Positions 3,091 to 59,518 of a stretch of DNA of 64,000 nt are shown here, in pieces (the stretch's first letter is position 1; every line of letters begins with the position of its first letter). A program made the translations under genes and the position numbers. Under the pieces are notes generated by a model. It worked only from the letters and a program-made list of their open reading frames with translations. It was not told the DNA's origin and ran no database searches. Where the stretch lies: positions 1 through 64,000 of IMG/VR virus record IMGVR_UViG_3300035703_000009; one strand, 5' to 3'.

Positions 3091-3438
3091 TTATTTTTTG
3101 ACTACTTTAAAAAGTGCTTTTTCGATGTAGAAACCGTTATTGATGAAATACTTTAAACTATCGACGTTACAGTGCGCGTAAACGGTTTTTTGAACATCCT
3201 TTAATTTAGCATCTCGATAGTTCCATAACATTTTATAGATTCCTCGACTTCTATATTCTTCTTTTACAAATGCATGGCATAAATAAATCACTGTTTCTTG
3301 TTCAACATATGAGACTATTCCTACTAACTCTCCTTTTATGAAACATCCATAATAGGTGGCGATTGCATCAATCAAGTCAGGTTTGATTTCGCTAAATTCC
3401 TTTTTTACTTTAGAATAATCTACTTTTTTTATTTCCAT
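3091..3438 (-). CDS. GNAT-family acetyltransferase
   Basis: FVKEEYRSRGIY acetyl-CoA-binding motif; YFINNGF. Confidence 0.8.
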   Translation of the reverse strand: MEIKKVDYSKVKKEFSEIKPDLIDAIATYYGCFIKGELVGIVSYVEQETVIYLCHAFVKEEYRSRGIYKMLWNYRDAKLKDVQKTVYAHCNVDSLKYFINNGFYIEKALFKVVKK

Positions 3439-51830: not shown

Positions 51831-52826
51831 ATGGATCATTATTCAACCCTTGGTGTCTCTAAGAACGCAACAGACGATGAGATTAAAAAAGCCTATCGTC
51901 AAATGACGTTAAAGTACCATCCCGACAGAAATCAGGACGATCCAGGAGCGGCTGACCAGTTTAAGAAGATAGCGGCTGCTTATGAAGTGTTAAGCGATTT
52001 AAAAAAGAAGGCAGAATACGATGGAGCTGCACAAAAGGCCTCACATGACTGGAACTATAACTTTAACGACGATTTTACCACCTTTTCAAATAACTTTAGG
52101 AACTCAGAGTTTAGAAGAAAGTCAAACGAACGTGCTAGAGCCTCACAGGGCAAGACCCACATGGGTCCAGTCGATACTTCATACTTGGACATCAATTTAA
52201 ACTGTGAAATCGATTTTAAAGAGACTGTCTTGGGTAAAAAGGTCGACATCACGTTTACTCGCAAAAAAATCGTCTATACTGGAGCGGCTGGCAACTTACT
52301 TAAGTACGTCAAAGAGGACGAAGAGAAGGAGATCAAGGTAAACTTTGACTTGCGTAAAACCTATTTACAGATCAAAAAGGAGGGACAAAACTATGTGGCT
52401 AAGGTCCGAGTGAGTAAGTTCGGTAACGAGGACGTCTCAGTAAGACCCAACATCTGGGGAGACATGGAGCAGTATCCTCTTACTGGAGAGTTATACATCA
52501 CAGTAACTATCATTATGCCTCCAGGAGTCGAACTTGAAAACAATAACATCATACACAGGGTTGAGATCCCACTATATAAGGCAATCATACCTGGAGAAAA
52601 AGTAGAGATTGAGACCGTCCTAGATAAAAAATATGAGGCTGAGATCAAGAGCCCAACTCACCTAAACGATCTTAAGCTAGTGATTAAGGAACAGGGCATA
52701 GCCGACTCATTTGGCACGATCGGTGATTATATCGTTAGATTCTCCATACTGGCTCCAAGAGTTGCTGATTTTAGTAAATCCAAAGTAGAGAGTTTGCGTA
52801 CAATATTGGTTGACTCCGGCGCATAA
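51831..52826 (+). CDS. dnaJ: DnaJ-family co-chaperone (class B, no zinc finger)
   Basis: J domain with YHPD and AYEVLSD; C-terminal substrate-binding domain. Confidence 0.88.
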
Positions 52827-52851
52827 CTTAAAAAATCTCCCAAAAGCCTTA

Positions 52852-52858
52852 ATAAATA
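52852..52858 (+). promoter_or_regulatory. late promoter in the loop of a 10-bp hairpin
   Basis: AAAGCCTTAA (52843-52852) / TTAAGGCTTT (52869-52878); 19 nt before the TTG start. Confidence 0.75.
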
Positions 52859-52876
52859 ATAAAAAAATTTAAGGCT

Positions 52877-54856
52877 TTGACAAGTACAAATTTAAGCTTC
52901 AATGGAGACAATCAGGACTGGGTCCTTATTGTTGAGAACATCGGCGAGACACTGGCTCAAGTCAAGTCTGGCGAAAACAACTCAGTTCTCGAAGGAGTCT
53001 GTGCAGTATTCGGCAGAATGAACAACAATCGCCGCGTTTACGAAAAAGAAGAATATTTACCCCACCTTTCATACTTAAAGGATAAGATCGCAAAACGACA
53101 ACTTGTCGGAGACTTGGATCATCCACCTCACTTTGATGTTAGCTTAAAGAGCGCATCACACATCATCGAAGAGCTTAAATATGATGGCGGAGACAAGGTT
53201 TACATTAAACTACGTATCCTCGAAAACACTCCAAACGGAAAAATTGCAAAGGCACTATTGGATGGCGGAGTTCAACTTTCGATCTCATCCAGAGCAGCCG
53301 GTCAAGTCTTTGAAGGCGGCAAAGTAAAACTACAAAGAATCTTTACTTACGATCTAGTAGGAGAGCCTGGATTCACAGAAGCGATCCTTAGAAAAACAGT
53401 TAGCGAGTCACTTAAGCATGACTTTCAGATGATAACTGAGAGCTACAACCACCTTAAAGAGGAGTCAGTAGTACAAACTCAAAACTTGACAGACATTTCA
53501 GAAAGTCTCAATTTTTCTGAAAATTTCAAAGTCTACAAGATAAATAAAACTAATGAAGATCTAGGATTAAACTTCCAATCGTCTTCAATTCAACAAAAAA
53601 ATAAAACAACCATGGTTGAATATGTAACTAAAGATCAGATGGATCAGTACTCTGAAGTATTAAAGAACCAGTTCGCCGGTCTTAAGAAAGAAATCAAATC
53701 TCAAAAGGAGCTACTTGAGTCAGCTAACTCATCTAATCCTACTGACATTAAGTTAGTTGGTTTTGTGAATTACTTGGCAGAACAACTCGAAGGAGTTGTA
53801 AACTATGCTAACTACATTTCAGGTAAGCTTAATGAGTCGATCAAGTACTCAGAGCACGTTGCAGAGACCACTAACAATTCTATCGCGTACTCAAGCTATG
53901 TTGGTGAACAGCTAAACAAATCGATCCAACATCAAGATCACATCGCTGAAAAGCTCAACCAAACTATTAACTATTCCGAGTACATCAAGGAAAACTTAAA
54001 TAACTCAATCAAATATCAAAACTATTTAGCTGAAGAGATAGACAAAGGAATCCAGTACACTGAATACGTTGCTGAAGGCTCAAACCGCGGCTTAGAATTC
54101 TCTGACTACTTAGCAGAACAACTCAACCTTAACCGCGATTACGCAGGCTATATTGCTGAAAAGCTTGGTCAGAGCATTGGTTATACTGAGTATATCGTTG
54201 AGTCTCTAAACGAAGGCACAACTGTTGGAAGCAAACGAAACGTTCTAAACGGAGTTGAAAAACTCGATGAGTCAGTTTCAGTTGACGCTCTAATCGCTAA
54301 GGTTGACCAAGTGATAACTGAAGTAAGCGACAAGTCTTCTAAAGCGGTTCTTGAAAGCAGATACCCATTCTTAAAGGTAATGAGTGAAGCTAAAAAGAAA
54401 GCATTCTTCGCTCTTGAAACAGACACTAAACAAGCGATTGTTGAAGCCCTAAACGGAGCTATCTGGTTCAACGAAAACGATGTAGCTGGAATCATGGAAG
54501 CAGTGGTTGATCATAAGACTCAAAACCTACCAGTTCACATAAGATTTATGCCTGCTGACTACAAAGCACTATGGAACGAGATGCATGAGAGCGAAAAGAA
54601 TCGCATCCACGCTAAGTCTCAGATGTATGACATTCGTACTCCATACCAAGCAAAAGCTTTCTGGGATGAAATGGACCTAAGAGGAGTTCAAGAAAGAATC
54701 GCAATCGAAAAGAATAACACAAAAATACAAGCACAGCTCAACGAAAGCCAAAGTACAGAAGGCCTAATACCTGTAAACCAGGTGGTTGAGATGCAGAGAG
54801 GTTACTCTCAAAACTATCTCGAGAAACTCCAACGCCAGGCGGACTATCGTAGATAA
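52877..54856 (+). CDS. gp21: prohead protease (gp21-like) fused to scaffold/core protein (gp22-like)
   Basis: N.NRRVY, GDLDHP, TPNG.IAK, ISSRAAG and YDLVGEPGF, then about 400 aa of helical repeats; directly upstream of the capsid gene. Confidence 0.88.
   Translation: MTSTNLSFNGDNQDWVLIVENIGETLAQVKSGENNSVLEGVCAVFGRMNNNRRVYEKEEYLPHLSYLKDKIAKRQLVGDLDHPPHFDVSLKSASHIIEELKYDGGDKVYIKLRILENTPNGKIAKALLDGGVQLSISSRAAGQVFEGGKVKLQRIFTYDLVGEPGFTEAILRKTVSESLKHDFQMITESYNHLKEESVVQTQNLTDISESLNFSENFKVYKINKTNEDLGLNFQSSSIQQKNKTTMVEYVTKDQMDQYSEVLKNQFAGLKKEIKSQKELLESANSSNPTDIKLVGFVNYLAEQLEGVVNYANYISGKLNESIKYSEHVAETTNNSIAYSSYVGEQLNKSIQHQDHIAEKLNQTINYSEYIKENLNNSIKYQNYLAEEIDKGIQYTEYVAEGSNRGLEFSDYLAEQLNLNRDYAGYIAEKLGQSIGYTEYIVESLNEGTTVGSKRNVLNGVEKLDESVSVDALIAKVDQVITEVSDKSSKAVLESRYPFLKVMSEAKKKAFFALETDTKQAIVEALNGAIWFNENDVAGIMEAVVDHKTQNLPVHIRFMPADYKALWNEMHESEKNRIHAKSQMYDIRTPYQAKAFWDEMDLRGVQERIAIEKNNTKIQAQLNESQSTEGLIPVNQVVEMQRGYSQNYLEKLQRQADYRR
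53612..54856 (+). CDS. putative nested in-frame scaffold protein (414 aa)
   Basis: Internal ATAAATA at 53540-53546 and an A-rich tract before an in-frame ATG (codon 246). Confidence 0.55.
   Translation: MVEYVTKDQMDQYSEVLKNQFAGLKKEIKSQKELLESANSSNPTDIKLVGFVNYLAEQLEGVVNYANYISGKLNESIKYSEHVAETTNNSIAYSSYVGEQLNKSIQHQDHIAEKLNQTINYSEYIKENLNNSIKYQNYLAEEIDKGIQYTEYVAEGSNRGLEFSDYLAEQLNLNRDYAGYIAEKLGQSIGYTEYIVESLNEGTTVGSKRNVLNGVEKLDESVSVDALIAKVDQVITEVSDKSSKAVLESRYPFLKVMSEAKKKAFFALETDTKQAIVEALNGAIWFNENDVAGIMEAVVDHKTQNLPVHIRFMPADYKALWNEMHESEKNRIHAKSQMYDIRTPYQAKAFWDEMDLRGVQERIAIEKNNTKIQAQLNESQSTEGLIPVNQVVEMQRGYSQNYLEKLQRQADYRR
53771..54211 (+). repeat. about 10.5 copies of a 14-aa repeat (Y/H-x-AE-x-LN-x-SI-x-Y-x-E)
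   Basis: YLAEQLEGVVNYAN, YISGKLNESIKYSE, HVAETTNNSIAYSS and following units. Confidence 0.85.
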
Positions 54857-54883
54857 TCAAAAACTAAAAAAATCAACTCAAAA

Positions 54884-56554
54884 ATGGCACGTACTAAAAT
54901 TTTCAGACGTTCAAGTGATAAGAACTTGGCCGCAACCTGGAAGCCAGTCCTTGAGAGCTATGGTGCAAATGTTGAAAAGACACCTTGGTTAGCAGAATAT
55001 GCTCACAACCACGGAATCTTCGACAACACTACTCCATTGTTCGAACAGGCTACTGCTCCCGGTCTATTCTTCCAACAACCAGCCTCTTTAGGCGGCTATG
55101 CTGGACAGATCTCCGCACCAACTAACTCGATGACTCCGTTCTCGGGTGGTGCAAAAAATGCATACGGTAACGTAGGCGACACCGTAGGTTCTGGTGACAA
55201 ATTTCCTTCATTGCTTCCTGTAGCTATCCAAGTTGCAGCTAAGACAATTGGATTTGACCTTGTTCCAGTTATCCCAATGGATTCTCCAGTAGGATTCCTT
55301 CCTTATCTTGATTACTTGTACACAGGTGGTCGTACAGATAAAGCATTTGATCCTTACATGGTAAAAGTTGTAGGAATCAACGCGAATGACTTCCCAGCTG
55401 GTCCAGCGTATGGTGATTCAATCACTGTATCTGGTAGTGGAGCTGGCGATTTCGATCTAGAATTCGTAGGCTACTCTCGTGTTGACGGTAACTTGATCAT
55501 CAAAATAGTTGCAGATAATGGCTCAAACATCATCGCTACTTCTCTTGAAGGTAACACTTTGACGATTGGAGTTGATACTTCAGCTACAGTTGATGCTGGT
55601 GCAGTACAATTAGTTTCTGCTCTTGAAAACCACATCTCTGGTTTCACTTCAGTATCTGATGATGACTATGCAAATTCTGGAAACTTTGTTGGTCCTTACC
55701 TTCCAACTACCGGAGCAGTTCCTGGTTCAATGAAGCGTGAAGCTTCTGAGCTTTCTAAGTTCCGTCAAATGGGCTTAAGAATGTTTACCAAATTCGTTGA
55801 GGCTGAAACTGATCAAGTTGCTATCTCTGCAACTGTTGAGCAGATCCAAGACCTTAACCGCGTTTGGAACTATGACGTTATCTCAATGCTTGAGAACGTT
55901 GCAGTTAACGACATCGCTCAATCAATCAACAAGCGTCTTGTAGACCGCGTGTTCACCCTTGCTGACGTTCACTCTAATGAAATCGATCTAGTTGAAGGTA
56001 CTGGAATCACTAACCTAGACTTAACTGCAGGTTCTGGTGGTTTCGAAAACATCTCAACTTTACAACGTAGAGTTGTTACCAAGATCCTTGAACTTGCTAA
56101 CTTGATCTACCACAGAGGTCGTTTCGGAGCAGCTTCTTACCTTGTTACCACAGGTCGTGTTGCTTCTGCTCTTGCAGACGTAGCTGGTTACTCAATCGCT
56201 CAAGTTCCATCTGACATGTCAACTACTGCAGGTCAATTGTACCCAGCAGGTAAAGTGTATGGCGTTCAGGTATATGTTGATCCTAACTTAAGTTGGGGAG
56301 ATACGCGTATCGTTCTTGGACGTAAGGGTGCTGACGAAGAACCAGGTGTTAAATTCATGCCTTACATCATGGCGGAATCACTTCAAACTATCGCTGAAGG
56401 AACAATGTCTCCTAAGATCGGTATGAAGTCGCGTTACGCTATCACCGAGGCTGGATGGCATCCTGAGACTCAGTATGTTAGCATGAACCTTCAAGGTCAA
56501 GACCTTGGTGTTCTAACTGGTAGCATCGCTCCACAGCCAAGCGGCACGCTATAA
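54884..56554 (+). CDS. gp23: major capsid protein (T4 gp23-like)
   Basis: W.PVLE, FDLVPVIPM.SP.G, EQIQDL, RGRFGAA, VYVDP, FMPY and SPKIGMKSRYA. Confidence 0.92.
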   Translation: MARTKIFRRSSDKNLAATWKPVLESYGANVEKTPWLAEYAHNHGIFDNTTPLFEQATAPGLFFQQPASLGGYAGQISAPTNSMTPFSGGAKNAYGNVGDTVGSGDKFPSLLPVAIQVAAKTIGFDLVPVIPMDSPVGFLPYLDYLYTGGRTDKAFDPYMVKVVGINANDFPAGPAYGDSITVSGSGAGDFDLEFVGYSRVDGNLIIKIVADNGSNIIATSLEGNTLTIGVDTSATVDAGAVQLVSALENHISGFTSVSDDDYANSGNFVGPYLPTTGAVPGSMKREASELSKFRQMGLRMFTKFVEAETDQVAISATVEQIQDLNRVWNYDVISMLENVAVNDIAQSINKRLVDRVFTLADVHSNEIDLVEGTGITNLDLTAGSGGFENISTLQRRVVTKILELANLIYHRGRFGAASYLVTTGRVASALADVAGYSIAQVPSDMSTTAGQLYPAGKVYGVQVYVDPNLSWGDTRIVLGRKGADEEPGVKFMPYIMAESLQTIAEGTMSPKIGMKSRYAITEAGWHPETQYVSMNLQGQDLGVLTGSIAPQPSGTL

Positions 56555-56583
56555 GCGAACCTTTTAGCTAAACTAGCTATATC

Positions 56584-56614
56584 AAAAAAGAGGACCCGTA
56601 AGTCCTCTTTTTTT
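56584..56614 (+). terminator. intrinsic terminator after the capsid gene
   Basis: AAAAAAGAGGAC-CCGTAA-GTCCTCTTTTTTT. Confidence 0.88.
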
Positions 56615-56625
56615 GTTTTAGCGGG

Positions 56626-56632
56626 ATAAATA
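56626..56632 (+). promoter_or_regulatory. late promoter ATAAATA
   Basis: 20 nt before ATG 56652. Confidence 0.72.
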
Positions 56633-56651
56633 ATAAAAACTTACAGATCAC

Positions 56652-57020
56652 ATGGCAACTATCATGTCAACTTTTTTGGGAATACAAGCACAGTTTAAAG
56701 TGCTACACTGGCAGACCCAAACCTACTCAAAACACATGGCCTATGGAGGCATATACGAGACTCTTGACGGACTAGTCGACGAGTTCATGGAAACTTACAT
56801 GGGCAAGCATGGTCGTATCGCTCTAGAAGGAGAAAAAGACGCAATCATCCTAAGCAACATCGGCGAGATGAAAATCGAGGACTTCCTAGAAACTCTTACA
56901 GGTTTCTTATTGTCCTTTAATAATCAACTAGATAGTAGCAAGGACAGCGATCTCCTGAACCTTAGGGACGAAATGTTAGGGGCAGTCAACAAGCTAAAAT
57001 ACTTGCTCACCTTAAAATAA
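56652..57020 (+). CDS. Dps/ferritin-like four-helix protein (DUF5856-type)
   Basis: LHWQT..YSKH.A....YE.L..LVDEF.E and NLRDEM....NKLKYLLTL. Confidence 0.8.
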   Translation: MATIMSTFLGIQAQFKVLHWQTQTYSKHMAYGGIYETLDGLVDEFMETYMGKHGRIALEGEKDAIILSNIGEMKIEDFLETLTGFLLSFNNQLDSSKDSDLLNLRDEMLGAVNKLKYLLTLK

Positions 57021-57745: not shown

Positions 57746-59518
57746 ATGTACTCATCTGGAATCGAAATACCTAAAGTCCAATTTTCTCTGATCGCTTTTA
57801 GCCAGATCGAGCCCGGAAGCTTTTTCTTGGGCTTTGACCTGGACAATGCAGGTACGCTATCAAAAATAGACAATACTGGAACCATTACTGTGATCGAGGG
57901 AGCCGGCGGAGGCAGCTCAATTATGATTGAGGACAGTGGGTTAGGCTCAACTGTTCGTATCAATAACTGTAATTCAGCAAGCAGTTGCTCTTCAACAGTC
58001 AGTGGCGGTTATTCAAACACTGCATCGGGTAATTATGCCACAGTTAGTGGCGGTTATTCAAACACTGCATCGGGTAATTATGCCACAGTTAGTGGCGGTG
58101 AGAGCAATACCGCATCGGTTTATCATTCCACAGTTAGTGGCGGTTTTGGCAACACGACATCGGGTGGTGCTTCCACCATTGGCGGCGGGTGTAGCAACAC
58201 GGCATCGGGTTATATTTCCACAGTTAGTGGCGGTAGCCAAAATACGGCATCGGGTTATAATTCCACAGTTAGTGGCGGTATATGCAACACGTCATCGAGT
58301 AGTTCTTCCACAGTCGGCGGTGGTGCGAGCAACACGGCATCGGGTTATTGTTTTTCCACAGTCAGTGGCGGTGTGGTTAACACCGCATCGGGTGCTGCTT
58401 CCACAGTGGGTGGCGGTAGCCAAAATACGGCATCTGGTGCTGTTTCTACAGTCGGTGGCGGATGTAACAACACGGCATCGGGTTGTTCTTCCACAGTGGG
58501 TGGCGGTAGACAAAACACGGCATCGGGTTGTAATTCAACAGTCAGTGGCGGTTGCGGTAATACTATTAATGCTTTTACAACATGTTTAGGTTATAGCGTA
58601 GTTGGAAATACCATAGGCGGTGGTCAACAAAATACAATAAATTCAAATAGCGCTTATAATGCAAATGCTGGTGGTGTTACAATAGCAGGCGGTTTTAACA
58701 ATACAACATGTTCAGGTTCTTATGGGTTTAATACCATAGGTGGTGGTCGTAGCAACACGTCATCTGGTGATTATTCCACAGTAAGCGGCGGAAATGCCAA
58801 CATGGCATCGGGTTATTTTTCCACATTAAGTGGCGGTTTTAGCAACACGGCATCGAATTCTTCTTCCACAGTCGGTGGCGGTAGCCAAAATACGGCATCT
58901 GGTGCTGTTTCAACAGTCGGTGGCGGATGTAGAAACACGGCATCAGGTTATTGTTCAACAGTCGGTGGCGGTTTTTGCAATAATGCATCGGGTGCTCGCT
59001 CTACTATTGGAGGAGGGTGTCGCAACACGGCATCGTGTACTTATTCTACAGTCGGTGGCGGTAGGAGCAACACGGCATCGGGTGCTTATTCCACAGTCGG
59101 TGGCGGTTTTTGCAACACGACATCGGGTTCTATTTCCACAGTTGGTGGCGGATATTGCAACACGGCGTCGAGTAATTCTTCCACAGTGGGTGGCGGATGT
59201 TGCAACACAGCATCTGGTGCTTGTTCCACAGTAAGCGGCGGGGTTAACAACACGGTATCGGGTGGTTATTCCACAGTCGGTGGCGGATGTAGAAACACGG
59301 CATCGGGTTGTAGAAGTTTTGTTGCAGGTGGTCAATGTAATAACACAAACAGTTGCAATGACGCTATGATAGTGGGCAGCTGTATCACGGCTGATCGCGC
59401 ATGTGCTACATTTGTCAATAACCTATCAATCAAGAGCATACCTACTTCGAGCGCGGGCTTACCTAGCGGCTCAGTCTGGCGGTGCACAGCTGACAATACT
59501 TTGCGTATCATTGCATAA
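57746..59518 (+). CDS. fibre/adhesin-like protein with Gly/Ser/Cys-rich beta-roll repeats
   Basis: About 29 copies of the 15-aa unit STV(S/G)GGxxNTASxxx; C-terminal PTSSAGLPSGSVW. Confidence 0.8.
   Translation: MYSSGIEIPKVQFSLIAFSQIEPGSFFLGFDLDNAGTLSKIDNTGTITVIEGAGGGSSIMIEDSGLGSTVRINNCNSASSCSSTVSGGYSNTASGNYATVSGGYSNTASGNYATVSGGESNTASVYHSTVSGGFGNTTSGGASTIGGGCSNTASGYISTVSGGSQNTASGYNSTVSGGICNTSSSSSSTVGGGASNTASGYCFSTVSGGVVNTASGAASTVGGGSQNTASGAVSTVGGGCNNTASGCSSTVGGGRQNTASGCNSTVSGGCGNTINAFTTCLGYSVVGNTIGGGQQNTINSNSAYNANAGGVTIAGGFNNTTCSGSYGFNTIGGGRSNTSSGDYSTVSGGNANMASGYFSTLSGGFSNTASNSSSTVGGGSQNTASGAVSTVGGGCRNTASGYCSTVGGGFCNNASGARSTIGGGCRNTASCTYSTVGGGRSNTASGAYSTVGGGFCNTTSGSISTVGGGYCNTASSNSSTVGGGCCNTASGACSTVSGGVNNTVSGGYSTVGGGCRNTASGCRSFVAGGQCNNTNSCNDAMIVGSCITADRACATFVNNLSIKSIPTSSAGLPSGSVWRCTADNTLRIIA
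57992..59346 (+). repeat. 45-bp (15-codon) degenerate tandem repeat in two blocks of about 13 units
   Basis: 58001-58045 is exactly duplicated at 58046-58090; the other units are degenerate. Confidence 0.9.

What the first reader, a model, noticed from the sequence alone, without database searches (positions are those of the whole stretch)
52877..54856. Protease-scaffold fusion with a nested scaffold gene driven by an internal late promoter
Seen: a single 659-aa ORF with a weak TTG start. After the gp21-like domain there is an internal GATAAATAA (53539-53547), an intergenic-looking A-rich tract (CAACAAAAAAATAAAACAACC) and an in-frame ATG at 53612. The capsid gene has no ATAAATA directly upstream. 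Known: T4 encodes gp21 and gp22 separately, while lambda C/Nu3 and herpesvirus UL26/UL26.5 use nested protease/scaffold genes. Inference: rare protease-scaffold fusion plus abundant free scaffold, with the internal promoter also driving the capsid gene.
Basis: partly seen in the sequence, partly recalled or inferred. Interest (0 to 1): 0.68.

Follow-up and report, generated by a model that had tools for sequence, protein, structure and literature searches.

The report
Nested scaffold gene inside phage protease gene
In a 207-kb lake phage the head protease and the head scaffold are one reading frame, and comparison of 52 relatives shows that a late promoter and a second start codon are kept inside it, so that free scaffold (and capsid protein) can be made in excess over the protease, the arrangement known from lambda and herpesviruses but not reported for T4-type proteases.

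Summary
ORF 52877-54856 (659 aa, TTG start) has a T4 gp21-type protease domain, a variable linker and a 414-aa all-helical C-terminal part, followed after 27 nt by a gp23-type capsid gene.

- ATAAATAA is the phage's late-promoter core. 45 of 70 copies lie in the 6% of the genome that is intergenic, mostly 17-22 nt before start codons, including tail sheath and baseplate genes. A gp55-like late sigma factor is encoded.
- Among 49 distinct homologues (45-80% identity) the internal ATAAATAA is the longest invariant nucleotide run of the gene, synonymous sites included.
- A second clade uses GATATATAR as promoter and carries that motif at the same internal place.
- The internal ATG is kept in 52 of 52 sequences, behind a conserved A-rich leader. 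The full-length ORF starts with TTG or GTG in 45 of 52.
- In T4 and an Alishewanella phage the same junction promoter contains the protease gene's stop codon. Here it is read in its only open frame.

No transcription start or protein end was mapped. I rate it a new variant of a known kind, widespread in lake phages and present, as a fusion, in huge phages.

The parts
52852..52859 (+). Upstream late promoter core ATAAATAA, followed by TAAAAA, 18 nt before the TTG start
   Evidence: Genome-wide motif analysis. The same motif lies 17-22 nt before the start of the fusion gene in all relatives of the ATAAATA clade.
52877..54856 (+). Full-length ORF, 659 aa, TTG start: protease-linker-scaffold fusion
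   Evidence: Thousands of homologues of about 656-660 aa. A single open frame in all 77 IMG/VR loci. Start codon TTG 39, GTG 6, ATG 7 of 52 distinct sequences.
52877..53476 (+). gp21-type prohead protease domain (about aa 1-200); His82 and Ser137 align with T4 gp21 His85 and Ser140
   Evidence: Pfam PF03420 41.7 bits and PF20034. PDB 5JBL E 1e-6. BLASTP against T4 gp21 E 8e-13. H82, S137 and S138 are invariant.
53504..53611 (+). Variable linker (about aa 210-245) that keeps intergenic-type signals while being translated
   Evidence: Indels and low residue conservation, except for the promoter codons and the A-run.
53540..53547 (+). Internal late promoter core ATAAATAA, read as ATA AAT AAn, the only frame of the motif without a stop
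   Evidence: Longest invariant nucleotide run of the gene among 49 sequences, and GATAAATAA is the lowest-entropy 9-mer. I222 is always ATA and N223 always AAT, whereas other invariant Ile and Asn columns use 2-3 codons. Replaced by GATATATAR in a second clade. PWM rank 57 of 414,000 positions.
53591..53611 (+). A-rich translation initiation region of the nested gene (A-run at 53595-53603)
   Evidence: Fourth lowest-entropy 9-mer of the gene. The genome's start sites lack Shine-Dalgarno motifs and are A-rich at -17 to -11. The capsid gene leader has the same A7-T block 10 nt before its ATG.
53612..54856 (+). Nested in-frame ORF from Met246, 414 aa: inferred free scaffolding protein
   Evidence: ATG in 52 of 52 distinct homologues. 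All-alpha model. Lies between protease and capsid gene.
53783..54214 (+). Ten tandem 14-residue repeats (aa 303-446), each ending in [IVL]-x-E; predicted long helices
   Evidence: Register printed. [LI]xE is enriched: 15 observed against 6.1 +/- 2.2 in shuffles for the nested part. Helices 44-115 and 122-200 of the nested protein. Only generic coiled-coil fold matches. More repeats in 642-735-kb phages.
54359..54751 (+). C-terminal small helical domain (aa about 495-625), the only confidently folded part
   Evidence: pLDDT 72-84. Conserved block in the alignments.
54737..54745 (+). Leu621-Asn-Glu623, the most conserved gp21-type cleavage motif; inferred site that releases the last 36 residues
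   Evidence: [LI]xE kept in 51 of 52 sequences. The cleavage itself is inferred from T4 gp21 specificity.
54884..56554 (+). gp23-type major capsid protein gene, co-transcribed
   Evidence: Pfam Gp23 E 2.2e-34. 16-35 nt A-rich spacer in all 48 loci where the gene could be read, with an ATAAATA in the spacer of only one.
56584..56613 (+). Intrinsic terminator that closes the protease/scaffold/capsid unit; the next ATAAATAA follows at 56626
   Evidence: 12-bp stem plus T-run. No terminator-like site between 52927 and 56583 on the + strand.

Best explanation
Genes in the positions of T4 genes 21 (protease) and 22 (scaffold) are joined into one reading frame, and the signals that once lay between them still work inside the coding sequence. 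Two messages and two proteins result. From the upstream late promoter (52852) a message is made on which a weak TTG start gives a little full-length protease-scaffold. From the internal late promoter (53540), recognised by the phage's gp55-like sigma factor, a second message starts inside the linker. On it (and probably also on the long message) the ATG at 53612, behind an A-rich leader of the type this phage uses instead of a Shine-Dalgarno site, gives the 414-aa scaffold alone. Both messages run on through the capsid gene to the terminator at 56584, so scaffold and capsid protein are made in excess over protease. The shared scaffold part then carries the protease into the prohead core. After assembly the protease is expected to cut at the many [LIV]-x-Glu sites, one per 14-residue repeat. 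It is also expected to cut at Leu-Asn-Glu623, detaching and degrading the scaffold.

Shown here: the anatomy, the promoter motif and its genome-wide use, the conservation of promoter, leader, ATG and weak start, and the co-variation of the internal site with the lineage's promoter type.

Inferred: the actual transcription start, use of Met246, the stoichiometry, the scaffold function of the C-terminal part and the cleavage sites.
For: Promoter identity:
- ATAAATA occurs 70 times in 207 kb. 45 copies are in the 6.2% of the genome that is non-coding, mostly 17-22 nt upstream of a start codon on the same strand, with consensus A-ATAAATAA-taAAAA.
- Genes behind it include tail sheath, baseplate wedge and head closure.
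- A gp55-type late sigma factor is encoded at G000 114025-114423 (phrog_234, E 3.8e-16; T4 gp55 hits the same family).

Internal site:
- In 49 distinct homologues of 45-80% identity the 8-mer is the longest invariant nucleotide run of the 1,977-nt gene.
- Only 6 of 110 invariant degenerate residue columns use a single codon, and two of them are the adjacent Ile222 (ATA, the rarest Ile codon at the four other invariant Ile columns) and Asn223 (AAT).
- The next residue varies between K and N but always begins with AA.

Co-variation:
- Lineages at about 36% identity have no ATAAATA. They have GATATATAR both 20-25 nt upstream of the gene and at the homologous internal codons (K-I-Y-K/R/S).
- In one 82-kb record the 10-mer occurs 5 times, all on one strand. 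The other copies lie upstream of long ORFs, and the reversed control gives 0.

Nested start:
- ATG is kept in 52 of 52 sequences within a linker full of substitutions and indels.
- The A-run before it is the fourth most conserved 9-mer and fits the genome's SD-less, A-rich start sites.

Low expression of the long form: TTG 39, GTG 6, ATG 7 of 52.

Operon: the capsid gene follows after 16-35 nt, with a promoter motif in the spacer of only 1 of the 48 loci where the gene could be read, and the terminator comes only after it.

Origin: in T4 and in Alishewanella phage Slickus01 a TATAAATA sits at the protease/scaffold junction and contains the protease gene's TAA. ATAAATAA has a stop in two frames and is open only as ATA AAT AAn, which is the frame used here.

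Scaffold character: all-alpha, with long low-confidence helices and a small helical end domain. [LI]xE is enriched 2.5-fold. T4 needs about 580 gp22 per about 55 gp21 (PMC9958956).
Against: - No 5' end, no ribosome or peptide data. The two lake metatranscriptomes that hold relatives give only assembled contigs, on the capsid gene and at 54771-54824, which cannot show starts or levels.
- The internal site has the core motif but a poor match to the downstream TAAAAA extension. It ranks 57th genome-wide and 55th of 70 by flanks alone.
- It lies 38-68 nt before the ATG instead of the usual 17-22 nt.
- No gp45-type clamp was found with the T4 protein (the record is estimated 81% complete).
- The C-terminal part has no detectable sequence similarity to T4 gp22 (hhalign probability 0.1%).
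- The complex prediction with the capsid protein gave no verdict.
- In the huge-phage clade the internal promoter-like site is not clearly conserved.
Confidence: 0.75

Rival explanations
1. The internal promoter is real but serves only to raise transcription of the capsid gene. Met246 is not an initiation site, and the only product of the gene is the full-length protease-scaffold, which cleaves itself as P2 gpO does.
For: The capsid gene has no promoter of its own in nearly all relatives, so an extra promoter upstream is useful by itself. P2 gpO-type single fusion proteins exist (as cited in bioRxiv 10.64898/2026.09.13.751334). The internal motif lies further from the ATG than is usual for this phage.
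Against: An ATG kept in 52 of 52 sequences inside an otherwise variable linker, preceded by a nucleotide-conserved A-run of the type found before this phage's genes, is not expected for a mere linker residue. A 1:1 protease to scaffold ratio conflicts with the conserved weak TTG or GTG start if that start also had to supply all the scaffold.
Confidence: 0.1
2. The nested scaffold is made, but only by internal translation initiation on the single long message, as with lambda C/Nu3. The conserved ATAAATAA is kept for another reason, such as an RNA or DNA binding site or a protein constraint with codon bias.
For: Lambda Nu3 and HFTV1 gp17.5 are made by internal initiation without a separate promoter. 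The flank match of the internal site is poor.
Against: The invariant 8-mer equals the genome's promoter core and uses the rare ATA codon. In other clades the site changes together with the lineage's own promoter motif. T4 and Slickus01 have a late promoter at the homologous junction. No consensus RNA structure or slippery site is evident (one search covers a different element of the gene; the region around 53540 was judged only by reading it).
Confidence: 0.08
3. The internal motif and Met are conserved only because the residues are needed (for instance Y-K-I-N as a recognition site), and the resemblance to promoter and start is coincidental.
For: K221, I222 and N223 are invariant residues in the close clade.
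Against: Residue constraint does not fix synonymous positions. The other invariant Ile and Asn columns of the same sequences use several codons. The residues differ in the second clade (K-I-Y-K-V) while the site still matches that clade's promoter.
Confidence: 0.03

Closest known systems
Herpesvirus UL26 / UL26.5 (assemblin protease gene with a nested, 3'-coterminal scaffold gene driven by its own internal promoter)
   Same: Protease at the N-terminus. The scaffold ORF is in frame and shares the C-terminus. There is a separate promoter inside the protease gene and an inferred excess of free scaffold. A conserved cleavage-type motif lies near the common C-terminus (Leu-Asn-Glu623 here; the herpesvirus maturation site is from my own knowledge). 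T4 gp21 shares the assemblin fold (own knowledge; PDB 5JBL matched).
   Different: This is a bacterial virus whose promoter is a T4-type late promoter read by a gp55-like sigma factor. There is no sequence similarity in the scaffold part. Expression here is inferred from conservation, not measured.
Phage lambda C / Nu3 and archaeal virus HFTV1 gp17 / gp17.5
   Same: Nested in-frame scaffold inside a prohead protease gene, giving more scaffold than protease (bioRxiv 10.64898/2026.09.13.751334).
   Different: Those use internal translation starts on one message, with no internal promoter reported in that text, and a different protease family (ClpP/S49-like for lambda, own knowledge).
T4 genes 21, 22, 23 (and Alishewanella phage Slickus01)
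   Same: Homologous protease and capsid protein, and the same gene order. A late promoter lies at the protease/scaffold junction (T4 locus L097 8083-8090; Slickus01 L096 about 3101-3108). The scaffold is rich in Leu/Ile-x-Glu sites and is degraded by gp21 (PMC9958956).
   Different: In T4 and Slickus01 the promoter contains the TAA that ends the protease gene, so there are two separate proteins. Here the promoter is read through in its only open frame. The scaffold part shows no detectable similarity to gp22.
Tenacibaculum phage pT24 'prohead core scaffold' (BAV39266, 527 aa) and the uncultured huge phages LR756500-LR756504
   Same: gp21-type protease fused to a long helical C-terminal part, directly before the next large gene, which is probably the capsid gene. 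In the huge phages the same 14-residue repeats and end domain occur in one frame.
   Different: These are annotated only as a single protein, and no nested gene has been proposed. The internal promoter-like site is unclear in pT24 and not conserved in the huge-phage clade.

Membership tests
Peptidase S77 (T4 gp21 prohead protease) | Match to the family profile above the curated cut-off | tested here: met
   PF03420 41.7 bits against a cut-off of 27, aa 38-146. Also PF20034 at 28.9 against 23.4, and phrog_207 at E 2.5e-38.
Peptidase S77 (T4 gp21 prohead protease) | Catalytic His and Ser in place | tested here: met
   His82 and Ser137 align with T4 gp21 His85 and Ser140 and are invariant in 20 homologues. 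That these are the catalytic residues is from the literature as I know it. The solved chain 5JBL has Ala at both positions.
Peptidase S77 (T4 gp21 prohead protease) | Proteolytic activity on core and capsid proteins | not testable with these tools
   Only the enrichment and conservation of [LI]xE motifs could be examined.
T4 gp22-type scaffolding core protein | Sequence or profile similarity to gp22 | tested here: not met
   hhalign of a 22-sequence alignment against T4 gp22: probability 0.1%. No PHROG or Pfam hit for aa 246-659.
T4 gp22-type scaffolding core protein | Encoded between protease and major capsid gene; helical; many protease sites | tested here: met
   Gene order. All-alpha model. 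15 [LI]xE against 6.1 expected.
Nested protease/scaffold gene pair (lambda C/Nu3, HSV-1 UL26/UL26.5, HFTV1 gp17/17.5) | Scaffold ORF in frame with and 3'-coterminal to the protease ORF | tested here: met
   ATG 53612 is in frame and shares the stop at 54854-54856.
Nested protease/scaffold gene pair (lambda C/Nu3, HSV-1 UL26/UL26.5, HFTV1 gp17/17.5) | Independent initiation at the internal start gives a separate scaffold protein | tested here: inconclusive
   Indirect only: ATG in 52 of 52 sequences, a conserved A-rich leader, and a weak start of the long form. No ribosome or peptide data.
Nested protease/scaffold gene pair (lambda C/Nu3, HSV-1 UL26/UL26.5, HFTV1 gp17/17.5) | Scaffold in molar excess over protease | not testable with these tools
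   Contigs of metatranscriptomes cannot rank expression.
T4-type late promoter (gp55-dependent) | TATAAATA-like element without a -35 element, upstream of late or structural genes | tested here: met
   ATAAATAA is enriched in intergenic DNA at a fixed distance from starts, with no information upstream of position -1. It lies before sheath, baseplate, head closure and protease/capsid genes.
T4-type late promoter (gp55-dependent) | Phage encodes a gp55-type sigma factor | tested here: met
   A 132-aa ORF at G000 114025-114423 hits phrog_234 'late sigma transcription factor' at E 3.8e-16. T4 gp55 hits the same family at 3.4e-69.
T4-type late promoter (gp55-dependent) | gp45-type sliding clamp and gp33 co-activator | tested here: inconclusive
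   The T4 gp45 protein found nothing in the 207-kb record. The record is estimated 81% complete and a divergent clamp could be missed. gp33 was not searched.
T4-type late promoter (gp55-dependent) | Transcripts start a few nucleotides downstream of the element | not testable with these tools
   No raw RNA reads were available for this phage.

The most novel reading that the evidence does not exclude
The nested arrangement (assemblin-fold protease gene with an internal promoter and an in-frame, 3'-coterminal scaffold gene) is not a convergence. It would be an old, repeatedly retained architecture shared by T4-type phages and herpesviruses, with the T4 state (stop codon inside the junction promoter) as a derived split. 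The fused form would then be the rule in a very large, mostly uncultured group of lake and huge phages of probably Bacteroidota hosts.
Probability: 0.12. Interest if true: 0.8.

Novelty: new variant of a known kind. Interest (0 to 1): 0.6.

Why it matters
It shows how a phage can set the ratio of protease to scaffold to capsid protein with three simple devices in one operon: a weak start codon, a promoter inside a coding sequence, and a second start.

It links the T4 gene layout to the herpesvirus and lambda layouts by a single frame change at a promoter that carries its own stop codon.

For annotation, thousands of metagenomic 'Peptidase U9' or hypothetical proteins of about 656-660 aa, and the 'prohead core scaffold' genes of jumbo and huge phages, probably stand for two products, of which only one is currently called.

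It is also a clean natural example of promoter and translation signals kept under selection inside an open reading frame, useful for benchmarking methods that look for overlapping functional elements.

Tried and rejected
1. RNA evidence. One search found 18 DNA runs from lakes and two lake metatranscriptomes with a 6-7% share of words. Laid on 52000-57000, these gave only short assembled contigs on the capsid gene and at 54771-54824, many from relatives. They say nothing about starts or levels.

2. Complex prediction of the capsid protein with the last 180 residues of the fusion protein (own alignments A3 and A4) gave no verdict, score 0.00. This is not evidence either way.

3. Fold searches with the model of the nested protein. 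BFVD returned only close homologues plus one 389-aa protein of Virus NIOZ-UU157 (E 2e-12), which I could not fetch. The PDB-wide search returned generic coiled coils at Z about 7, below the level that means anything for long helices.

4. Search for relatives in which the scaffold part is a separate gene.
- Nearly all short hits are fragments at contig ends or are split by a run of N.
- One JGI contig has separate calls for a 190-aa S77 protease and the 448-aa P0213, in the same frame, before a Gp23 gene.
I do not count it as a proven split.

5. A consensus RNA structure for the second conserved nucleotide block (54738-54814) was not supported: 3 pairs and no compensatory change.

6. Megablast of 10 kb against cultured and deposited phage genomes found no match.

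7. Literature searches for a fused or nested gp21/gp22 found none.

8. The large representative-protein search was not used, because the claim does not rest on absence of relatives.

Full report
THE OBJECT

The window is the first 64 kb of a single 207,110-bp virus record (GC 42%, CheckV estimate 81% complete).

- ORF 52877..54856 (+) is 659 aa. Its frame opens at 52856, and the first start codon in frame is TTG at 52877.
- Residues 38-146 match Pfam Peptidase_S77 (41.7 bits, cut-off 27) and residues 17-307 match PHROG 207, head maturation protease.
- The domain finds the solved T4 gp21 structure 5JBL (E 1e-6).
- His82 and Ser137 align with His85 and Ser140 of T4 gp21 and are invariant among homologues.
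- The next gene (54884..56554) is a gp23-type major capsid protein. The gene before it is a DnaJ homologue.

THE MOTIF IS THIS PHAGE'S LATE PROMOTER

- ATAAATA occurs 70 times in the genome. 45 copies are in the 6.2% that my simple gene model leaves non-coding.
- Most copies lie on the strand of the next gene, 17-22 nt before its start codon. The consensus is A-ATAAATAA-taAAAA, with no information further upstream.
- Genes directly behind it include tail sheath, baseplate wedge and a head-closure protein.
- The genome encodes a 132-aa protein of the same PHROG as T4 gp55, the late sigma factor (E 3.8e-16). A T4 gp45-like clamp was not found, which I treat as inconclusive.
- One copy sits 18 nt before the TTG of the fusion gene (52852). 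The internal copy at 53540 ranks 57th of about 414,000 positions with a weight matrix trained on the intergenic sites. That is within the range of the training set but at its weak end, because the downstream A-rich extension is poorly matched.

COMPARATIVE EVIDENCE FOR THE INTERNAL PROMOTER

The protein has thousands of full-length homologues of about 656-660 aa in lake and other metagenomes. I fetched 77 IMG/VR loci at 36-80% identity. All carry one uninterrupted frame.

- In 49 distinct sequences of 45-80% identity the DNA at the internal site is ATAAATAA without exception, while the codons around it vary synonymously.
- Of 110 residue columns that are invariant and degenerate, only six use one codon throughout.
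- Two of the six are the neighbours Ile222 (always ATA, which is the rarest choice at the four other invariant Ile columns) and Asn223 (always AAT).
- The 8-mer is the longest run of invariant nucleotides in the whole gene, and GATAAATAA is its lowest-entropy 9-mer.

A second clade (about 36% identity) has no ATAAATA.
- Its genes are preceded by GATATATAR, and exactly this motif stands at the homologous internal codons (K-I-Y-K/R/S).
- In one 82-kb record the 10-mer occurs five times, all on one strand, and the reversed control occurs zero times. Three copies lie before other long ORFs, one before the fusion gene and one inside it.

The internal site therefore follows the promoter type of its lineage. 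A residue constraint or an unrelated DNA signal would not do this.

THE NESTED START

- The linker between protease domain and Met246 is poorly conserved and has indels of 3-12 residues. The ATG is nevertheless present in 52 of 52 distinct sequences.
- The A-run 9-17 nt before it (53595-53603) is the fourth most conserved 9-mer of the gene. Where the residues there change (Q/E, K/N), the nucleotides stay A-rich.
- Start sites in this genome have no Shine-Dalgarno signal (21 of 242 genes have an SD-like 4-mer). Instead they show 50-56% A at positions -17 to -11. This pattern is typical of Bacteroidota and fits the relatives among Tenacibaculum phages.
- The capsid gene leader has the same A7-T block about 10 nt before its ATG.
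- By contrast, the full-length frame begins with TTG in 39, GTG in 6 and ATG in only 7 of 52 sequences, always 17-25 nt behind the promoter motif.

THE TRANSCRIPTION UNIT

The capsid gene follows after 16-35 A-rich nucleotides in all 48 loci where it could be read (three loci end too soon). Only one of them has an ATAAATA in the spacer. In the window no terminator-like site lies between 52927 and 56583. A strong one (12-bp stem and T-run) lies at 56584-56613, followed at once by the next promoter. Both promoters therefore feed the capsid gene.

RELATION TO T4

- In T4 a TATAAATA lies at the 21/22 junction, 27 nt before the gene 22 ATG, and includes the TAA that ends gene 21. A second one lies inside gene 22, before gene 23.
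- The unfused Alishewanella phage Slickus01 has the same layout: the protease gene ends TAT AAA TAA.
- ATAAATAA contains a stop in two of its three frames. The only open reading is ATA AAT AAn, which is the one used here.
- The fusion is thus the T4 layout with the junction promoter read through. The 'intergenic-looking' linker is an intergenic region that is now translated.

WHAT THE C-TERMINAL PART IS

- It has no Pfam or PHROG family of its own and no detectable similarity to T4 gp22.
- The AlphaFold model is entirely helical. It shows very long helices at low confidence across residues 44-200 of the nested protein, and a small helical domain at pLDDT 72-84 near the end.
- Fold searches gave only generic coiled coils.
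- Residues 303-446 are ten 14-residue repeats in perfect register, each ending in [IVL]-x-Glu. Leu/Ile-x-Glu is the known cleavage motif of T4 gp21 (own knowledge).
- The nested part has 15 such sites against 6.1 +/- 2.2 in shuffles. The best conserved is Leu-Asn-Glu623 (51 of 52 sequences), 36 residues from the end.
- Position, helical repeat structure and site density fit a scaffold that the protease degrades, as gp22 is in T4 (PMC9958956). This is an inference.
- Huge phages of 462-735 kb have the same fused protein with more repeats.

WHAT IS KNOWN

Nested protease/scaffold genes are established for lambda, HSV-1 and, by ribosome profiling, the archaeal virus HFTV1. I found no report of this layout for gp21-type proteases. 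The cultured relative pT24 is annotated with a single 527-aa 'prohead core scaffold'.

LIMITS

- No transcription start, no initiation site and no protein were observed. The RNA data were contigs only, and the complex prediction gave no verdict.
- The gene model used for the motif statistics is a simple longest-ORF model of my own.
- The homologues are related, so counts of sequences are not counts of independent events. The control for this is the behaviour of other invariant columns in the same sequences and the change of motif between clades.

Noticed in passing
window 54738-54762 (aa 621-628, LNESQSTEG), continuing to about 54783: A second block is conserved at nucleotide level. Third-position entropy is 0.13 over codons 622-626 against a gene mean of 1.26, with Asn always AAC, Gln always CAA and Ser as AGC. 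It covers the most conserved [LI]xE motif, about 120 nt before the capsid ATG. A short hairpin (CCTG..CAGG, 54771-54783) shows a possible compensatory variant (TCCG..CGGA) in two loci, but RNAalifold found no supported structure. Unexplained.
   Followed up: partly
window 52877 and the homologous starts in loci L002-L082: The non-ATG start (TTG 39, GTG 6 of 52) of the protease-scaffold frame is conserved across 45-80% identity, always 17-22 nt after the promoter core. Late messages of this phage would therefore have leaders of only about 10-15 nt.
   Followed up: yes
whole genome G000 (start sites of 242 modelled genes): There is no Shine-Dalgarno signal, G is depleted upstream of starts, and there is an A-rich peak at -17 to -11. 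Together with relatives among Tenacibaculum phages this points to a Bacteroidota host. The runs that hold the sequence are mostly lake water metagenomes (18 DNA runs, 15 studies).
   Followed up: partly
window 51831-52826 (+): A full DnaJ homologue (J domain plus C-terminal domain) is encoded directly upstream of the head morphogenesis operon. In T4, by contrast, the portal, gp67 and gp68 genes lie upstream of the protease gene.
   Followed up: no
window 56652-57020 (+) and 57746-59518 (+): After the capsid gene's terminator comes a DUF5856 / 'starvation-inducible regulator' type protein with its own ATAAATAA promoter. It is also found next to the capsid gene in a relative (L104). It is followed by a 590-aa protein with UspA1-type adhesin repeats and a beta-roll match, possibly a fibre or decoration protein.
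   Followed up: no
G000:C1:114025-114423 (outside the window): A gp55-like late sigma factor gene of only 132 aa (T4 gp55 has 184-185 aa) lies just upstream of a 1,066-aa gene that has an ATAAATAA promoter.
   Followed up: partly
loci L099, L100 (LR756502, LR756501; 642-735 kb phages) against the window: The number of 14-residue repeats in the scaffold part is larger in the huge phages (about 13-14 against 10 here), and extra acidic or Gln-rich inserts are present. This could mean that scaffold length scales with capsid size.
   Followed up: no
JGI contig carrying P0213 (sample 3300050338; no DNA served): Gene calls show a separate 190-aa S77 protease and a 448-aa homologue of the nested scaffold, in the same frame and 84 nt apart, before a Gp23 gene. 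This is either a natural split form or a stop caused by error. Its closest IMG/VR relatives are fused.
   Followed up: partly
T4 record NC_000866, locus L097 934-2505: T4's own annotation lists internal transcription and in-frame translation products for gene 17 and an internal start in gene 21. Promoters and starts inside late genes therefore have precedent in T4 itself.
   Followed up: no
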